Below are positions 6,553 to 48,186 of a DNA stretch of 64,000 nucleotides, piece after piece; within the stretch, counting starts at the first letter, position 1; every line of letters begins with the position of its first letter. Source of the DNA: Phyllobates terribilis (lineage: Eukaryota); assembly GCF_046119375.1 (NCBI RefSeq), contig NW_027362771.1, positions 599,292,001-599,356,000 on the forward strand, read 5' to 3'. The notes beneath the pieces are model-generated. The model did no database searches and was not told the origin of the DNA. It saw nothing but the letters and a program-made list of their open reading frames with translations. A program made the position numbers and the translations under genes.

Positions 6553-14705
<8,153 letters not shown>

Positions 14706-14912: not shown

Positions 14913-17589
14913 GACTTTTACTAGTAAAGTGGCTTTTCATTCTCTTTTGTAGTAAACAATGTAACGAGCCCAACACCCTGAATCATGCAACTTTTTTTTT
15001 TTTTTGTCGTCTACTGGAAGGACACTAACACAAGGAAATGGCGGTCCACAGTTCCAGTGTCACGGGTCATGGCTAGGAGAGGGTCTCCATCGAGATCTGC
15101 GGCTCTAAGCCTAATTGTAAGACTATTCAGTACTTGCCACGTACAAAATGGACTGGTCCGACTTGGGGGGGAACAAATATTAATTGAAAGGATGCCTCCT
15201 CTGTGTACCAACCTATTTATCCAGATTATCAGATATCCTAGGGTGTCATCCTTTGTAAAGAACCAGTCCTCTCATTCTCGGTTCCGGCCACTAACACAGA
15301 TATTCTGTTTTTGAATCGACAAGTACCGAACAAACTGTTGCTCAGTCAAGGGAAAGATGCCTCTTCTCAAACAAATCAATATCCTTTCTTCCTTTTTAAT
15401 GTGGTGAAGAGAAAAGTCAAAGATCTGCCCAGCTCTGGCAGCAGATTCTGGAAATAATCTTGGTCCCGGAAATGTTTGTCAGGAGGAAATTGCTTTCCTT
15501 TATCGTGCGTCCCGAGGGTTGTATCACGGACCTTACAAAGTAATGTCCGATCTACATTCCCTAATCTAGTCTTGTGGTTCAGTTAGCGTTGTCAGCTGCA
15601 GCTGGAGAGCTTGTCCAAGCTGAGTCAGGAGACTTTGGTTAGGTCTGGATAACCATTTTATTTCGCGGAAGACTTGTCTAACTTTATGATAGACATTTCT
15701 TTTTTACCAAGTGTTTATCAAACGGAGGGGCGGGGGGGGTATAGCTAAATAAGCATATAATGCTGTCTGCAGGGCAAGCGTTAAGAGAGCCAAAGCCAGT
15801 AATGAAGTGAAGCTTGCAAGGGAGACCACAAGCAATAAAGGATTTTGTGGTATGTCAAAAGAAAAACCAAAGACGCTATAGGATTTTTACAGGATGAAAA
15901 GGGTGAAGTGGTCAAAAATGATGTTGAAGGCTGAACTTTTAAATTCCTATCTTGACCCTGTGTCTAAGTATGCAAATGTAATATCAACTGATCTTCACGA
16001 TGCTATTGAAGCAATAAAATCCACACGATCTATAACCAGAGAGATGGTGAGGGAACACTTAGCTAATTTACATGAGTTTATATCTCCTGATCCAGATAAA
16101 TTATATCCTAGGGTACTGAAGATGACAGAGGAAAATTTAGAACCACTAGCCATAATGTTTGAAAAAAGATTAGAACAGGAAGTCCCCGAAGATTGGAGAA
16201 GGGCAAATGTCCCTATCAAAAAAAGGAAAGACTGAGTTGGGAAAATTACAGGCTTTACTTCTATACCAGGAAAAAAGCTGTTTAACATTTATTAAACAGC
16301 TTGCATGTAAGTACTTGGATAAGAATACAGTAATTAACCGGAGCCAGCATGGGTTTGTAGCAAGCAAGTCATGTAGACTCATCTAATTCCCTTCTATGAT
16401 GGAATCACTGACTGGGTGGATCAGGGAAATGCGGTAGATATACTGTATCTCAACTTCATTAAAGCATTTGATAAAGTATCTCATTATTGAAAAAAATGAA
16501 TGACCAACTATGGGATTGACAAGGCTACGGTTAGGTGGATTCATAACTGGCTCTGTGATCATATGCAAAGAGTGGTAATAAATGGTTGCACATCCAATTG
16601 GAAGAGTGTTTCAAGTGGGGTACCACAAGCCTCTGACCTGTTGCCGGTGTTCAACATTTTTATAAATTATATAGATAAGGGAACTGAAGGTGACCTAATC
16701 AAATTTGCAGATGATGCAAAGCTAGGAGTGATCGGTAACACGAGAGAAGACAGAGGATTCAGAAGGATCTAGGTAAGGTTGAACAATGGTCAGCGACTAA
16801 TAGAATGGTATTTAACGGAAAAATACAAGATTCTACATCTGGGCAAGAAAAACTAAAATGACATCTACAGAATGGGAGGAATAGAACTAAGCAACAGGAG
16901 GCGTGAAAAAGACTTGGGTATACTAATAGATCAGACTGCACATGAGTCAACAGTGTGATGCAGCAGCAAAAAAGGACAAACAGTTCTGGTATGTATTAAG
17001 AGAAGAGAAGCATAGTGTAGATCACGTGAAGTAACTATTAGTAATGAGCGGCGTACTCTGATAATGCGTTGTCCTAGTATCCCGGGGGTGCTCTGTTAAT
17101 GTCTGAGTCCATGAGGCTGCATGTTTTGCGGCAGTAGACATCGGCATCACATGCGGGGTTTGCATGTTTTTTAGGCAATCCCCAGATGTGATTCGGCTAT
17201 CTACCTGCAATCTATGTCCTACGAGGAATGGTTAACCCCTTTACCCCCCGAGGGTGGTTTGCACGTTAAGAACGAGGCCAATTTTTACAACTCTGACCAC
17301 TCACTTTGAGGGAAGAACGCTTCAACGGATCCCCCTGATTCTGAGATTCTTTTTTTTCGTGACGATAGTGGTAACATTTATTCGATATCACTTGTGTTAA
17401 CTTGTGAAAAAAAAATTGAAATTTGGCAAAAATTTGGAAAATTTCACAATTTTCAAACTTTGAATTTTCATGCCCTTAAATCAGAGAGAGATGTCACACA
17501 AAATAGTTAATGAATAACATTTCCCACATGTCTACTTTACATCAGCTCAATTTTGGAACCAATTTTTTTTTTTTGTTAGGGAGCTATAA

Positions 17590-21166: not shown

Positions 21167-21758
21167 TTTTTTTTTTATGTATGTGGTGCGTATCATTACT
21201 TTATTTAGAGTGTGTCCGTGCGTGTGCGTGTGTGCTCGGTTTTTTCTGAGAAAAAAAAAGAACAAACGTAAGTGGTGCAAACAGCGAGCACGAGTGCGGA
21301 TGAGTGATCTGTGGTCACTGATACAGCGCTTGGCCGCTGCACGAAGCACGAAAAAAGAACGGACAAAAGTCGAGCTATCAAGTACTGATCAAGCGGTTAT
21401 CAGCACTTGGTGGCAGAAAGGGATCAAAAAATCCTACTTACAGTTGTCTTCTGTAAGACGTCTTCTGGAGCAGGAGCAGCGATTGTGGTGTCACAGGCTT
21501 CTGTGGCACCACAAGGCCCAGCACGGCGCACAATCAGACAGCGCGACCGCCCTCTAGAAAAGAAAAAAAGGGTAAAGTAGCGAGCGCGAGTCCTGATCGG
21601 TGATTTGCGTCACCGATCAACTTTCGGCGACTGCTGGATGGATGCACGCACGGAAAGTGGGAGGGGGAAGGGGGAATTGACAGGGACAAAATAAAGTCCT
21701 GAAAAGCAGCGAGTATGGACGTTGATCAGTGCAGGATGCACGAAAAAAACAAACGGGG

Positions 21759-21980
21759 AGGGGGATTGGGGTGGGAAGGGGGCTAAAAAGAGGGAGGAGA
21801 GGGGGATTGGGGTGGGAAGGGGGCTAAAAAGAGGGAGGAGAGGGGGATTGGGGTGGGAAGGGGGCTAAAAAGAGGGATGAGAGGGGGATTGGGGTGGGAA
21901 GGGGGCTAAAAAGAGGGAGGAGAGGGGGATTGGGGTGGGAAGGGGCTAAAAAGAGGGAGGAGAGGGGGATTGGGGTGGAT
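21759..21980 (+). repeat. 41-bp G-rich tandem repeat, about 5 copies
   Basis: Unit AGGGGGATTGGGGTGGGAAGGGGGCTAAAAAGAGGGAGGAG; starts at 21800 and 21841. Confidence 0.9.
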
Positions 21981-23468: not shown

Positions 23469-24666
23469 TTGGACACGATGACCCTGGAGGTCCCCTCCAA
23501 CTCTAACATGCTATGATTGCAGCTCCATCCATGGAAGTTATTTTGGAAGGTAAGGGATTGGTTAAGTTATGTGCACACAGGGTTATTTTGTGTTTTTCTC
23601 AAAAGCTAGATCTCTTCTCTACGAGGCTGGTCAAGAGATTTTTATATCATAGTTTTGAAGGCTCAGCTTCTAGTTTTCTGTCCTGGAGTCAACGTTGTCT
23701 TTATGCTTGGTGGCCATAATAATCTTTTTGCCCAGATGCCCTGGCTTACCTGGCTCGGGATTCTGTCTGCGCCAGATCCTTTCAGAGGTAGAGGGTCGCC
23801 TTCGCAGGATCCCTGTGTTTTAATCTCAATCCAGGGTCTACAATTTACGGCCTAGAATTTCTGAGTAAGGGTCTCTGCAGATTTTATAGAATCCTTTATA
23901 AAAAAAAATTAGGGAAAACCTATAATAGTCATGCCACGACCTGGAAAGCTTTTGTCTACTTTACACTTCTTCTTCTCCTGTACCAGTCAATACAATTCTG
24001 TTTTGATGGTGGTGCTTCTAAAGTCCAGGTCTTTGCACTTATCATCCAACCCTCCCTTTTTAAATATCCTAAGGGCTCATTCACGCATCAGGGTTCAATG
24101 TTGATCCAAGTGTCGGATCAAACTCTCCAATGAAAGTCTATGGGTCCATGAAAAAAAAAATAATTGGACAGCACTCTGATGCCATCTGGGATCTGTTGAG
24201 TTGCAGGTCTCCAAGGCTTGTCCTGCTAGAAGGATTATGGCTACTTGGATTGAACATACAACCGAAGAGTTTTGCTTTTTTATATTTCTTTGTTAACCAT
24301 TACTGGTGCCGTCATGGGTTTAGGAGGAAAAAATTGATAATTACTTGGCGGTAATTTGATTTTCCGGAGCCCATGACTGCGTGCTTCATATTCCCTTCCT
24401 TTTTATTCTGGAAGAAGTGATGTTTCCTTCACTTGGTAATATGTATTAGTTGCTTTCTGTCATCGCAGTCCGTATTGAAGGTTTTTCTTTACAAACCTTT
24501 TTAGGTTTCCTGTCCTGGATGGGTGATCCTCTCTCCTGTTGCTGGTATGGGATATGGAAAAATCAAATTACCAGCAAAATTTTTTTTTTACAGTATTCAT
24601 TTTATTTTAAAAATGACCTGGAAATTTGAGTTTCCAGGTCAGTACAATTATGCAGATACCAAACAT

Positions 24667-24705
24667 CGCCTCTTGAAAAAGAACGCCGAAACGCGCGTCG
24701 GGGCG
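24667..24705 (+). ncRNA. Minimal type I hammerhead ribozyme variant (Penelope-type)
   Basis: Stem I CGCCTC(24667-72)/GGGGCG(24700-05). Core UUGAAAA, which is CUGANGA with the compensatory C3U/G8A change. One-bp stem II G(24681)-C(24687). GAAA at 24688-91. Palindromic stem III CGCGCG. GUC cleavage triplet ending at 24699. Confidence 0.7.
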
Positions 24706-25315
24706 CGCTTTCCCCAGTTGCACTGCTGGATACTCCCTGTTGGGGTCGTGGGCCCTTCTTATTCCGTTTATCTGTGGTGAGTCACTGTACCGATGCGCCA
24801 TATGGATTACAGGCCTTACTAATACCCCCTTCATTTGATATGGGGGAATTTATATATAGGCAATGAATAAGGTTAAGGTCTCCCTGTATGCTAAACTATA
24901 TCAACTGTGATTTTTATTTTATGTTACCCGCTTGGTGTGGGATGGATATTATGATATAGGGGGCCACCTCTTCCTTGGCGCTATAGATTCTATTATCTTG
25001 TATATATCAACATTGACTTACCTATGTCTGTATTGATTGTGTATACAAATTGACTACTTTATACTGCCCGCTCCCCCTCGGTACTCCCCAGCCTCTGGCA
25101 CTTTGCACCTTACCCCTCTGACACTGTAACTTTTATATGCTTTTTATAACTTGGAATTTTGTATTTAAATAAAATTATACTCATTGTTTGCCACAGTACT
25201 CAAGTGTCCTCCTATTTTATATGCATTTATTGGAGTAGGCAATACGGACCTGGTGCCTGACACTAGGTTTTGGTACTATGGTCTGTCCAGTATTGAACAT
25301 TTGGCCTTTTTTCTT
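24668..25315 (+). mobile_element. Hammerhead-headed non-autonomous retroelement (Penelope pseudo-LTR or retrozyme-like), 648 bp
   Basis: Flanked by the exact 15-bp direct repeat CAGATACCAAACATC (24653-24667 and 25316-25330); internal AATAAA at 25168; no long ORF. Confidence 0.7.
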
Positions 25316-25700
25316 CAGATACCAAACATCTATAGTTTTTGGTTTAAGTTGGCAAACAAAAAAATTCACTAGTGACGCCACTTCCCAAGATTTTGAACTT
25401 TAGGTGGATGGAGCTGTGTGAAGACTTGTTTTTGTGCCCTGAGCTTAGGATTTTATTGATATCAATTTGGGGAACATATTATGTTTGATTGCCTTTCATT
25501 ACATTATTATTGTGTTGTGGTGTCCAAAAAAAACTGCAATTTTGCAGTTTCGATTTTTTTTTTTTTTTCTCGCGTCATTTACCGTTGTGATTAATTTTAT
25601 ATTTTGATAGACTGGACTTTTACGAAAGTGATACCAAATGTGCGTTTACTTTATTTTAATGGGAGTGATTTGAACTTTTATATATTTTTTTAAAGTTTAA

Positions 25701-26045
25701 AGGGGTATTCATATCTCCAAGATGCGATCCCAATATGTAGTAGGTGTAATAATAATAGCAAATACCTCCAATTAGAAATGTAGTATAGTTCTTCTGATAA
25801 GCTATGTCGCTACTCCATGTTAAGGGCATTGCAGGACCTTTAGGTATCCATGGTTATGACCACTAACAACTAGCTAACTGCAACTATGAGTTGTTGTAAC
25901 CATGGATACTTAAGCTACTGCAATGTCCTGCACATGGGGTAAGCCCCATAGCGAACCAGAATAGCTATACTACATTTCTAATGGGAGGTATTTGCTAATA
26001 TTATTATTACTACATATTGGGATCAGAGTGCTGGAAATATCCCTT
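25701..26045. mobile_element. T2/Kolobok-type MITE
   Basis: TTAA flanks; AGGGGTATT start; about 90-bp imperfect TIRs (GATCCCAATATGTAGTA..TAATAATAGCAAATACCTCC..TTAGAAATGTAGTATAG and its reverse complement). Confidence 0.75.
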
Positions 26046-26646: not shown

Positions 26647-28795
26647 CACTGCTCAAAAAAATAAAGGGAACACTTAAACAACAGAATATAACTCCAAGTA
26701 AATCAAACTTCTGTGAAATCAAACTGTCCAGTTAGGAAGCAACACTGATTGACAATCAATTTCACATGCTGTTGTGCAAATGGAATAGACAATAGATCGA
26801 AATTATCGGCAATTATCAAGACACCCTCAATAAAGGAGTGGTTCTGCAGGTGGGGACCACAGACCACATAGCAGCGCCAATGCTTTCTGGCTGTTTTGGT
26901 CACTTTTGAATGTTGGTTGTGCTTTCACACTCGTGGTAGCATGAGAAAGACTCTACAACCCACAGAAGTTGCTCAGGTAGTGCAGCTCATCCAGGATAGC
27001 ACATCAATGCGAGCTGTGGCAAGAAGGTTTGCTGTGTCTGTCAGTGTAGTGTCCAGAGGCTGGAGGAGTTACCAGGAGACAGGCCAGTACATCTGGAGAC
27101 GTGGAGGGGGCCGTAGGAGAGCAACAATCCAGCAGCAGGACCATTACCTCCTCCTTTGTGCAAGGAGGAACAGGAGGAGCACTGCCAGAGCCCTGCAAAA
27201 TGACCTCCAGCAGGCCACAAATGTGCATGTGTCTGCACAAACGGTTAGAAACCGACTTCATGAGAGTGGTATGAGGGCCCGACGTCCACAGATGGGGGTT
27301 GTGCTCACAGCCCAACACCGTGCAGGACGCTTGCAGTTTGCCACAGAACACCAGGATTGGCAAAGTCCCCACTGGCGCCCTGTGCTCTTCACAGATGAAA
27401 GCAGGTTCACACTGAGCACATGTGACAGACGTGACAGAGTCTGGAGACGCCGTGGAGAGCGATCTGATGCCTGCAACATCCTTCAGCATGACCGGTTTGG
27501 CAGTGGGTTAGTAATGGTGTGGGGTGGCATTTCTTTGGAGGGCCGCACAGCCCTCCATGTGCTTGCCAGAGGTAGCCTGACTGCCATTAGGTACCGAGAT
27601 GAGATCCTCAGACCCCTTGTGAGACCATATGCTGGTGCGGTTAACCCTGGGTTCCTCCCAATGCAGGACAATGCCAGACCTCATGTGGCTGGAGTGTGTC
27701 AGCAGTTCCTGCAAGATGAAGGCATTGAAGCTATGGACTGGCCGCCCGTTCCCCAGACCTGAATCCGATTGAGCACATCTGGGACATCATGTCTCGCTCC
27801 ATCCACCAACGTCACGTTGCACCACAGACTGTCCAGGAGTTGGCGGATGCTTTAGTCCAGGTCTGGGAGGAGATCCCACAGGAGACCATCCACACCCTCA
27901 TCAGGAGCATGCCCAGGCGTTGTAGGGAGGTCATACAGGCACGTGGAGGCCACACACAATACTCAGCCTCATCAGGAGCATGCCCAGGCGTTGTAGGGAG
28001 GTCATACAGGCACATGGAGGCCACACACAATACTCAGCCTCATCAGGAGCATGCCCAGGCATTGCAGGGAGGTCATACAGGCACATGGAGGCCACACACA
28101 ATACTCAGCCTCATCAGGAGCATGCCCAGGCATTGTAGGGAGGTCATACAGGCACGTGGAGGCCACACACAATACTCAGCCTCATCAGGAGCATGCCCAG
28201 GCATTGCAGGGAGGTCATACAGGCACGTGGAGGCCACACACACAATACTCAGCCTCATCAAGAGCATGCCCAGGCGTTGTAGGGAGGTCATACAGGCACG
28301 TGGAGGCCACACACACAATACTCAGCCTCATCAGGAGCATGCCCAGGCGTTATAGGGAGGTCATACAGGCACGTGGAGGCCACACACAATACTCAGCCTC
28401 ATCAGGAGCATGCCCAGGCGTTGTAGGGAGGTCATACAGGCACGTGGAGGCCACACACAATACTCAGCCTCATCAGGAGCATGCCCAGGCGTTGTAGGGA
28501 GGTCATACAGGCATGTGGAGGCCACACACAATACTGAGCCTCATTGTGACTTGTTTTAAGGACATTACATCACAGTTGGATCAGCCTGTAGTGTGTTTTT
28601 CCACTTTAATTTTGGGGGTGACTCCACATCCAGGCCTCCATTGGTTAATAAATGTGATTTCCATTGATGATTTTTGTGTGATTTTGTTGTCAGCACACTC
28701 AACTTTGCACAGAACAAAATATTCAATGAGAAGATTTCATTCATTCAGATCTAGGATGGGTTATTTCAGTGTTCCCTTTATTTTTTTGAGCAGTG
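26647..28795 (+). mobile_element. Near full-length Tc1 transposon
   Basis: TA TSD; perfect TIR CACTGCTCAAAAAAATAAAGGGAACAC. Transposase from ATG 26941 with TDESRF, QDNARPH and, after a 1-nt frameshift near 27742, [10 protein letters not shown]. Confidence 0.95.
27895..28545 (+). repeat. 71-bp tandem array (about 9 copies) of the Tc1 transposase 3' end
   Basis: TCAGGAGCATGCCCAGGC recurs at 27901, 27972, 28043, 28114, 28185 and onward. Confidence 0.93.

Positions 28796-34012: not shown

Positions 34013-48186
<14,174 letters not shown>

What the first reader, a model, noticed from the sequence alone, without database searches (positions are those of the whole stretch)
24653..25330. Hammerhead-ribozyme-headed 648-bp insertion with an exact 15-bp target-site duplication
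Seen: 24668-25315 is flanked by identical CAGATACCAAACATC repeats. Its first ~38 nt fold as a type I hammerhead: stem I CGCCUC/GGGGCG, core UUGAAAA, A, a one-bp stem II (G-AACGC-C), GAAA, palindromic stem III CGCGCG and GUC at 24697-24699. The rest is non-coding, with AATAAA at 25168. Established: Penelope-like elements and non-autonomous retrozymes carry minimal hammerheads with palindromic stem III that cleave as dimers, and U3-A8 is a compensatory form of the C3-G8 core pair. Inference: this is a mobile, self-cleaving, protein-free retro-element copy, possibly from an uncatalogued frog family with a circular or multimeric RNA intermediate. It lies between the converging MCM7 and COPS6 3' ends.
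Basis: partly seen in the sequence, partly recalled or inferred. Interest (0 to 1): 0.82.

Follow-up and report, generated by a model that had tools for sequence, protein, structure and literature searches.

The report
Frog retroposon copy with hammerhead-like head
This is one old, inserted copy of a moderately repeated, non-coding frog retroposon whose first 39 bases look like the stripped-down hammerhead ribozyme of Penelope-like elements; it is a good example of a known kind, and nothing here shows that it cuts itself.

Summary
A 648/649-bp block (24667/8-25315) lies between two exact copies of a 15-mer. Other copies of the interrupted high-copy host repeat run straight through the site, so this is a true insertion with a 14-15-bp target-site duplication. 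Contigs from public runs of the same species show diverged copies (about 8-18% different) that start at the same base, 24667. They also show more depth over the 3' part, as a 5'-truncating retroposon family would give.

The first 39 nt meet a relaxed minimal type I hammerhead descriptor: 6-bp helix I, U3-A8 core, bulged A, G10.1-C11.1, GAAA, palindromic CGCGCG and GUC. This is the only hit in the window, with about 4e-4 expected by chance. Summed DNA contig depth over this 39-40-nt block is far above that of the body.

Against an active ribozyme:
- Helix II is a single base pair.
- Rfam scores 14.7 bits against a threshold of 34.
- In its genomic context the hammerhead fold loses to a competing hairpin.

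No paralogue sequences could be fetched, so no covariation test was possible. No tandem partner, RT/GIY-YIG ORF or evidence of circular RNA was found.

Best reading: a decayed non-autonomous, probably Penelope-dependent retroposon copy. Other first readers noted U3-A8 hammerheads elsewhere in this genome; those notes are untested.

The parts
24653..24667 (.). Left copy of the target-site duplication (14 bp certain; C24667 may be the first base of the element)
   Evidence: Exact 15-mer found only twice in the window. It is part of a high-copy host repeat whose other copies carry it once (loose ends at 24666).
24667..24705 (+). Minimal type I hammerhead-like head. Helix I is 24667-72 with 24700-05. 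The core UUGAAAA (U3...A8) is at 24673-79, with bulged A24680. G24681-C24687 is the only helix II pair. GAAA is at 24688-91, the palindrome CGCGCG at 24692-97 and U-C at 24698-99. The predicted cut is after C24699.
   Evidence: Sequence. Full-length but sub-threshold Rfam RF00163 match, 14.7 bits. Only descriptor hit in the window, about 4e-4 expected. From the bin mean and the depths listed at 24708-24731, I estimate summed DNA contig depth of about 5,800 over 24670-24707, against about 10 for unique flank and 245-374 for the body. Contig breaks at 24697 and 24678 in X1, and a contig starting at 24678 in X5, fit exact sharing of 24668-24707 among copies.
24668..25315 (+). Body of the inserted non-coding retroposon copy (648 bp; 649 bp if C24667 is included)
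   Evidence: Bounded by the duplication. Paralogous contigs of 82-92% identity, two of them starting at 24667 (records 26 and 18). No ORF above 65 aa inside, no protein relative, no tRNA and no other Rfam family.
25072..25272 (+). 3' part with 4-6 times more summed depth than the middle. This fits 5'-truncated copies or a 3' module shared with a partner element. It contains AATAAA at 25168-73 and the 5' part of the predicted long hairpin at about 25244-25286.
   Evidence: Depth 1371-1908 against 245-374 in X9. The 3' 126 nt fold at -35.5 kcal/mol, z = -2.05, 8 of 200 shuffles as good. At 25250 most copies read T, which would keep the pair as G-U in the fold.
25316..25330 (.). Right copy of the target-site duplication
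   Evidence: It is followed by TATAGTTTTT, the same letters that follow position 24666 in uninterrupted paralogues of the host repeat.
24609..24666 (.). Interrupted host repeat, a very high-copy family that resumes at 25331
   Evidence: Summed depth 28,866 in X9 against about 10 for unique flank. Loose ends at 24608 and 24666 in 181-223 contigs.

Best explanation
The block 24667/8-25315 is one old, immobile copy of a moderately repeated, non-coding retroposon family. It was copied from RNA into a staggered nick inside a copy of another repeat (target-primed reverse transcription), which left a 14-15-bp duplication. Its RNA sense strand is the + strand. Its first 39 nt are a Penelope-type minimal hammerhead module with the compensated U3-A8 core and a palindromic helix III that can only be completed by pairing two copies. 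This module carries far more depth than the body, which suggests other families share it. The element most likely depends on the RT/GIY-YIG protein of Penelope-like elements of this frog, as animal non-LTR retrozymes are thought to. In this family helix II is reduced to one G-C pair. The head is therefore at best a weak ribozyme that needs a dimer or a protein, and may only be a relic kept for another role in the element's RNA. This single copy has no second hammerhead, so it cannot release a unit-length RNA or form a circle.

Shown: the insertion, the duplication, the family, the shared 5' end, the motif and its depth. Inferred: the retrotransposition route, dependence on a Penelope-like element and hammerhead ancestry. 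Not shown: any cleavage.
For: The exact 15-mer occurs twice only.

Empty-site evidence: 181 contigs of the host repeat in X9 continue after 24666 with G+TATAGTTTTT. In the window the letters after the right repeat are C+TATAGTTTTT.

Family: summed contig depth over the body is 245-374 in X9, against 9-13 on unique flanks. Listed paralogous contigs differ by about 8-18% (records 12, 13, 15, 18, 26, 28). Records 26 (X9) and 18 (X5) begin at 24667, record 26 with 95 unrelated letters before it.

Depth rises to 1371-1908 over 25072-25272, the 5'-truncation pattern of TPRT elements.

Motif: it is the only hit of a relaxed min-hammerhead descriptor on both strands of the window. In 40 Mb of random sequence there were 42 core-only hits, and none had helix I of 5 bp or more. 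The 3' half, GAAACGCGCGUC, equals the Rfam type I consensus. The ACGCGCGU self-duplex is worth -13.3 kcal/mol.

The bulged nucleotide after A9, G10.1-C11.1, the palindromic helix III and the U3-A8 variant are all features reported for Penelope-element min-hammerheads, of which about 9,000 occur in Xenopus tropicalis (PMC4209133). Retrozymes of Xenopus are reported as relatives of Penelope pLTRs, with dispersed monomers (bioRxiv 10.64898/2026.07.22.740005).

Untested scan notes place U3-A8 hammerheads in a Penelope leader and a pseudo-LTR, and a Penelope ORF, in this same genome.
Against: Helix II is one base pair, whereas reported Penelope min-hammerheads have 6-8 bp. Hammerheads that lack stem-loop II are weaker than their parents (PMC10766806).

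Rfam scores 14.7 bits against a gathering score of 34.

In context, the helix I pair probabilities are 0 and a hairpin 24688-96/24703-12 competes.

In the one Penelope-like element studied in vitro, the hammerhead sits at the pLTR-ORF junction, roughly 90 nt upstream of the RT start sites (cut site 26 nt, RT start sites 111-118 nt into the ORF). It would therefore lie near the 3' end of insertions, not at the 5' end (PMC11167929).

No RT/GIY-YIG ORF, pLTR or tandem partner is in the window.

No paralogue sequence could be fetched, so there is no covariation test. The depth over the head may partly come from other hammerhead-bearing families that share only its 3' half, and summed contig depth is not a copy number.
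Confidence: 0.6

Rival explanations
1. It is a LINE-dependent, SINE-like retroposon (for example mobilised by CR1/L2-type elements, fragments of which may lie in the window). It happens to carry a hammerhead-derived head, as the Schistosoma SINE-like elements do.
For: A 14-15-bp duplication and 5'-truncation-like depth are equally typical of LINE-type TPRT. Possible LINE RT-like open frames lie at 15882-16769, judged by eye only. The hammerhead position does not match the studied Penelope element.
Against: There is no tRNA, 5S or 7SL head. There is no A-tail or microsatellite tail at 25315. The head has the specific traits of Penelope min-hammerheads.
Confidence: 0.2
2. The resemblance to a hammerhead is historical or coincidental only. 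The conserved GC-rich head works as something else, such as the start of the transcript, a protein-binding hairpin or the end point of reverse transcription, and never cleaves.
For: Helix II is 1 bp. The score is below threshold. A competing hairpin is favoured in context, with its bulge at the variable site 24708. The insertion retains the 32 nt upstream of the predicted cut, so its template RNA was not cut there. Hammerhead mutants did not affect insertion by the anole Penelope element in vitro.
Against: All invariant core positions are present, with the one known compensated pair. Helix I is 6 bp and there is an 8-nt self-complementary helix III. Chance expectation is about 4e-4 per window. 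By my estimate, the high-depth block ends at about 24707, close to the hammerhead's end (24705) rather than the hairpin's (24712).
Confidence: 0.2
3. One reading: an active, self-cleaving retrozyme-type element that spreads through multimeric or circular RNA.
For: The family shares a fixed 5' end exactly at the start of the motif. A unit-length copy of a circle with a fixed RT start would give this. The palindromic helix III fits dimeric cleavage. Amphibian retrozymes make circles (PMC7229834).
Against: It is a single unit with no tandem copy. The listed paralogues are 8-18% diverged, and no near-identical one was among them. Helix II is vestigial. No run on record as RNA holds the element.
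Confidence: 0.1
4. It is not an insertion: the 15-mers are chance repeats, part of a segmental duplication, or ends of a DNA transposon.
For: By rough arithmetic, an exact 15-mer pair within 1 kb is expected about 0.06 times per window.
Against: The repeat boundaries coincide with the 5' end defined independently by paralogues and with the break in the host repeat. There is no similarity beyond the repeats and no terminal inverted repeats.
Confidence: 0.02

Closest known systems
Minimal hammerheads (min-HHR) of Penelope-like elements (Cervera & De la Pena 2014, PMC4209133)
   Same: Type I topology, short helix I, an unpaired base after A9, G10.1-C11.1, a palindromic helix III that needs a dimer, the U3-A8 core variant, many dispersed single motifs per genome, and presence in frogs.
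   Different: Helix II is 1 bp instead of 6-8 bp. The motif sits at the extreme 5' end of a 648-bp non-coding unit rather than in a pLTR next to an RT/GIY-YIG ORF. The link to a Penelope-like element is not shown here.
Animal non-LTR retrozymes / amphibian satellite-2 repeats (PMC7229834; bioRxiv 10.64898/2026.07.22.740005)
   Same: Non-coding, AT-rich body, type I hammerhead, duplications longer than 4 bp, dispersed monomers reported in Xenopus, and a proposed dependence on Penelope-like elements.
   Different: Those are tandem units of about 150-450 bp with canonical hammerheads (4-bp helix II, loop-loop contacts). This is a single 648-bp unit with a stripped-down motif, and the unit boundary is at the start of the motif, not at the cleavage site.
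Poseidon element of Anolis (PAc; Frangieh et al. 2024, PMC11167929)
   Same: A hammerhead that shows no cleavage without the element's protein and is not needed for insertion in vitro.
   Different: In PAc the motif lies at the pLTR-ORF junction upstream of the internal RT start sites, so it ends up near the 3' end of insertions.
Engineered minizymes/maxizymes (PMC10766806)
   Same: A hammerhead without stem-loop II, whose activity can depend on dimer formation.
   Different: Those dimerise through the helix II region. Here the self-complementary part is helix III. They are artificial constructs.

Membership tests
Hammerhead ribozyme type I (Rfam RF00163) | Score at or above the curated gathering score | tested here: not met
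   14.7 bits against 34. The match covers the whole model, 1-45. No hit at gathering threshold in the window.
Hammerhead ribozyme type I (Rfam RF00163) | Conserved core: N3-U4-G5-A6-N7-N8-A9, G12-A13-A14, with 3 and 8 able to pair | tested here: met
   UUGAAAA and GAAA are present. The 3-8 pair is U-A, a natural variant reported in Schistosoma Penelope-like elements.
Hammerhead ribozyme type I (Rfam RF00163) | Helix II of several base pairs closed by a loop | tested here: not met
   Only G24681-C24687 can pair. The next position is an A/C mismatch.
Hammerhead ribozyme type I (Rfam RF00163) | Helix I, and cleavage triplet NUH followed by the 3' strand of helix I | tested here: met
   Six pairs, one of them G-U, between 24667-72 and 24700-05. 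GUC is at 24697-99.
Hammerhead ribozyme type I (Rfam RF00163) | Mg2+-dependent self-cleavage | not testable with these tools
   Needs a transcription and cleavage assay. The in-context fold does not favour the active shape.
Penelope-like-element minimal hammerhead | Unpaired base between 9 and 10.1, G10.1-C11.1, palindromic 15.2-16.2 / loop 3 | tested here: met
   A24680, G24681-C24687, and CGCGCG within the self-complementary ACGCGCGU.
Penelope-like-element minimal hammerhead | Long helix II (6-8 bp) | tested here: not met
   1 bp.
Penelope-like-element minimal hammerhead | Large families of the motif in one genome, with compensatory changes | tested here: inconclusive
   Summed depth over the head is roughly 500 times unique depth by my estimate. 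No copy sequences could be fetched, so compensatory changes were not assessed.
Penelope-like element | RT plus GIY-YIG ORF flanked by pseudo-LTRs | tested here: not met
   No ORF above 65 aa in the block. No repeat of the block and no second motif in the window. The copy could only be a non-autonomous derivative.
Animal non-LTR retrozyme | Two or more tandem units, each with a hammerhead, so that a unit RNA can be released | tested here: not met
   A single unit with one motif.
Animal non-LTR retrozyme | Linear and circular unit-length RNA | not testable with these tools
   No listed holder is on record as RNA. Contigs give no ends or strand.
SINE | tRNA-, 5S- or 7SL-derived Pol III head and an A-rich or microsatellite tail | tested here: not met
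   ARAGORN found nothing. There is no such Rfam match. The 3' end reads ...GGCCTTTTTTCTT.

The most novel reading that the evidence does not exclude
The family is a so far undescribed frog class of unit-length, hammerhead-headed, Penelope-dependent retroposons. Both of its ends are set by one fixed reverse-transcription start on a circular RNA. Its hammerhead has dispensed with helix II and works only as a dimer or with the element's protein, a natural 'minizyme'.
Probability: 0.1. Interest if true: 0.6.

Novelty: new member of a known kind. Interest (0 to 1): 0.28.

Why it matters
It adds a clean, well-bounded example, with an exact duplication and an empty site supported by paralogues, of a non-coding frog retroposon that carries a Penelope-type minimal hammerhead with the U3-A8 core. 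If the one-base-pair helix II proved to be the family's normal state and still allowed cleavage, it would mark the lower limit of a natural hammerhead. It would also bear on the open question of what these motifs do for Penelope-like elements. As it stands, the copy is ordinary genomic debris in a 19-kb intergenic stretch, with no sign of an effect on MCM7 or COPS6.

Tried and rejected
1. Other copies in the window: blastn of the block against the rest of the window found nothing. The host repeat also has no second copy there.
2. Fetching paralogues through translated frames: the 65-aa frame 24669-24863 found no protein in the 5.8-billion collection. Even the locus's own frame is absent, so further searches of this kind were dropped.
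3. Pattern scan of public collections for the U3-A8 head: three metagenome hits, all GC-rich sequence with no hammerhead context that looks like bacterial coding DNA, so chance matches. None in viral contigs.
4. RNA evidence: no listed holder is on record as RNA, and a filter on 'RNA-Seq' listed none. X1 and X5 are of unknown library type, so their depth step cannot be read as transcription.
5. A contig start at 24678 in X1 and X5 looked like an RNA end near the hammerhead. It is better explained by assembly-graph branching where copies share 24668-24707 exactly and differ at 24708.
6. COPS6 or MCM7 3'-UTR membership: rejected, because the stops are 8.7 and 9.9 kb away.
7. SINE head: no tRNA or Rfam support.
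8. Terminal inverted repeats or a larger duplication: none.

Full report
**1. The observation**

CAGATACCAAACATC stands at 24653-24667 and again at 25316-25330. With up to two mismatches allowed these are the only two matches in 64 kb, and none of 100 shuffles reached two. Similarity stops at the repeat: three of the five bases before it agree, and nothing after it does. It is therefore not the edge of a larger duplication.

Between the repeats lie 648 bp with no open frame longer than 65 codons. There is no tRNA and no Rfam family above noise apart from a weak hammerhead match. AATAAA is at 25168-25173. It lies 148 nt from the 3' end and no A-run follows, so I give it no weight.

**2. Is it an insertion?**

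The window holds no second copy of the block or of its flanks. The evidence comes from laying Logan contigs of four public runs of the same species on 24000-26000.

Three results matter:
- **The host site is itself a repeat.** 24609-24666 belongs to a very high-copy repeat, with summed depth 28,866 in DNA run X9 against 9-13 on unique flank. In 181 contigs of X9 and 17 of X1, that repeat continues after 24666 with G then TATAGTTTTT. In the window the same ten letters follow the right-hand 15-mer (C25330, then TATAGTTTTT). Uninterrupted paralogues thus carry the 15-mer once and read straight through, which is the signature of an insertion with a target-site duplication.
- **The block is itself repeated.** Summed depth over its middle is 245-374 in X9 and 124-247 in X13. 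The listed paralogous contigs each have about single-copy depth and differ from this copy by roughly 8-18% (records 12, 13, 15, 18, 26, 28).
- **Copies share the 5' end.** Two paralogous contigs, X9 record 26 (with 95 unrelated letters in front) and X5 record 18, begin to match at 24667. The 5' end set by the duplication is therefore the family's own 5' end. It also suggests that C24667 belongs to the element, making the duplication 14 bp plus one ambiguous base.

Depth rises to 1371-1908 over 25072-25272. This is the pattern left by 5'-truncated copies of an element reverse-transcribed from its 3' end, or by a 3' module shared with a partner element. Either way it fixes the + strand as the RNA sense strand. 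The tool warns that summed contig depth is not a copy number, so I use it only for order of magnitude.

**3. The hammerhead-like head**

*The motif.* On paper, 24667-24705 has:
- a six-pair helix I, with one G-U;
- the core U3-U4-G5-A6-A7-A8-A9;
- an extra A;
- G10.1 and C11.1 around five unpaired bases;
- G12-A13-A14-A15.1;
- CGCGCG;
- U16.1-C17;
- the 3' strand of helix I.

*Rfam.* The type I model aligns over its full length but gives 14.7 bits against a gathering score of 34. The 3' half, GAAACGCGCGUC, is identical to the model consensus.

*Chance.* I wrote a relaxed descriptor that allows either C3-G8 or U3-A8, an optional bulge, any 3-30 nt between G10.1 and C11.1, and any even palindrome of 0-8 nt. 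It hits the window once on both strands, at this place, with helix I of 6 bp. In 40 Mb of random sequence with the window's dinucleotide make-up there were 42 hits without any helix I requirement, and none had helix I of 5 bp or more. That gives about 0.13 core-only hits and about 4e-4 full hits expected per window. Chance is therefore a poor explanation, all the more so at the first base of a mobile element.

*Depth.* The bin 24670-24736 averages 3558 in X9, yet total depth is only 385 at 24708 and 843 at 24730. The excess must therefore sit in 24670-24707, at about 5,800 by my arithmetic.

*Contig breaks.* In X1 one contig ends at 24697 and the next starts at 24678. X5, from a separate study, also has a contig starting at 24678. 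With 31-letter words, this is what exact sharing of 24668-24707 among copies with different flanks and a C/T difference at 24708 would give.

So a discrete block of about 40 nt, coextensive with the motif, carries much more depth than the rest of the element and appears to be kept exactly in copies whose bodies have drifted 8-18%. Part of that depth may come from other hammerhead-bearing repeats that share only its 3' half.

**4. Reasons to doubt a working ribozyme**

- Helix II is one base pair. The Penelope min-hammerheads described so far have 6-8 bp. Engineered hammerheads without stem-loop II are weaker than their parents unless they dimerise.
- The isolated 39-mer keeps helix I (pair probabilities 0.81-0.99). 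With 30-230 nt of context those probabilities fall to 0, and a hairpin 24688-96/24703-12 takes over (0.2-0.75). Its bulge is the variable site 24708.
- The 56-nt stretch around the motif is no more stable than shuffles (z = -0.5).
- In favour of the dimer idea, ACGCGCGU is self-complementary and worth -13.3 kcal/mol.
- The insertion retains the 32 nt upstream of the predicted cut, so the RNA that was copied had not been cut at this motif.

**5. What it most likely is**

The literature gives the frame:
- Cervera and De la Pena (PMC4209133) described minimal type I hammerheads in the pseudo-LTRs of Penelope-like elements. These have the unpaired base after A9, the conserved G10.1-C11.1 and a palindromic helix III. 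A U3-A8 variant occurs in Schistosoma, and about 9,000 mostly solitary motifs occur in Xenopus tropicalis. In vitro activity is low and only as dimers.
- Cervera and De la Pena 2020 (PMC7229834) defined animal non-LTR retrozymes as tandem units of about 150-450 bp with canonical hammerheads that give circular RNA.
- A 2026 preprint (10.64898/2026.07.22.740005) relates Xenopus retrozymes to Penelope pLTRs and finds dispersed monomers.
- Frangieh et al. (PMC11167929) showed that an anole Penelope element starts reverse transcription internally, that its hammerhead needs the protein, and that cleavage is not needed for insertion.

The copy here fits as a non-autonomous derivative of that world: a duplication of TPRT size, 5'-truncation-like depth, no coding capacity and a Penelope-type head. 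It fails the defining tests of a retrozyme (no tandem partner, no canonical hammerhead) and of a Penelope-like element proper (no ORF, no pLTR). The position of the motif at the extreme 5' end differs from the anole element.

Notes of other first readers in this scan report U3-A8 hammerheads in a 'Penelope leader' and a 'Penelope pseudo-LTR', and a Penelope ORF, elsewhere in this genome. I could not read those stretches and count them only as leads.

**6. Surroundings**

- The open frame ending at 14702 matches the last 70 residues of Xenopus MCM7 (E 7e-39). Its stop is at 14703-14705.
- The minus-strand frame 34016-34114 matches the last 33 residues of COP9 subunit 6 (E 1.7e-17). Its stop is at 34013-34015.
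- The genes do converge, but the element lies about 9.9 and 8.7 kb beyond their stops, in a repeat-rich spacer. It is not in a plausible 3' UTR.
- The mir-17-family and mir-25 hairpins at 13958-14157 are the usual MCM7 intron cluster.

**7. Unexplained**

In X1 and X5 the contig covering 24678-25740 is 8-10 times deeper than the contigs just upstream (104.9 against 13.4; 9.6 against about 0-1). These are small assemblies of unknown library type from two studies. The step could mean a transcript or an open-chromatin peak that starts at the element's head. Contigs give neither strand nor ends, and no run is on record as RNA. I leave it open.

**8. Verdict**

This is a real, well-bounded insertion of a known kind of element with a degenerate or minimal hammerhead head. 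It is a new member rather than a new kind. Self-cleavage and circular intermediates remain untested and, for this copy, unlikely. Other first readers found the same class of motif elsewhere in this genome.

Noticed in passing
window 24678-25740: In the small assemblies X1 and X5 (library type unknown, two studies) the contig over the element and 425 bp downstream is 8-10 times deeper than the contigs just upstream (104.9 against 13.4; 9.6 against about 0-1). This could be a transcript or an open-chromatin peak that begins at the element's head.
   Followed up: partly
window 24609-24666 and 25331 onward: The insertion sits in a very high-copy repeat (summed depth about 28,900 in X9 against about 10 for unique flank) that contains the hairpin at 24612-24643. 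Its family was not identified.
   Followed up: partly
window 25675-26024: A fold-back element with 72-nt inverted arms (25740-25811 / 25942-26013, 83% complementary). It has the highest depth seen here, up to 1.1 million summed in X9, so it is an extremely abundant MITE-like repeat of this genome.
   Followed up: no
window 13958-14157: mir-17-family and mir-25 precursors pass the Rfam thresholds (52.9 and 62.5 bits) on the MCM7 strand, upstream of the last MCM7 coding exon (which ends at 14702). Only two hairpins passed; mammals have a three-member cluster here (from memory).
   Followed up: no
window 27896-28544 and 21758-21978: Two young minisatellites in the MCM7-COPS6 spacer: 71 bp x 9.1 copies (96% matches) and 41 bp x 5.4 copies (98% matches).
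   Followed up: no
window 15882-16769: Open frames on the + strand that look like fragments of a LINE reverse transcriptase just downstream of MCM7. Judged by eye only, not searched.
   Followed up: no
window 25244-25286: A long imperfect hairpin in the element's 3' region. The 3' 126 nt fold with z = -2.05. At 25250 most copies read T, which would keep the predicted pair as G-U. It may be a recognition structure for reverse transcription.
   Followed up: partly
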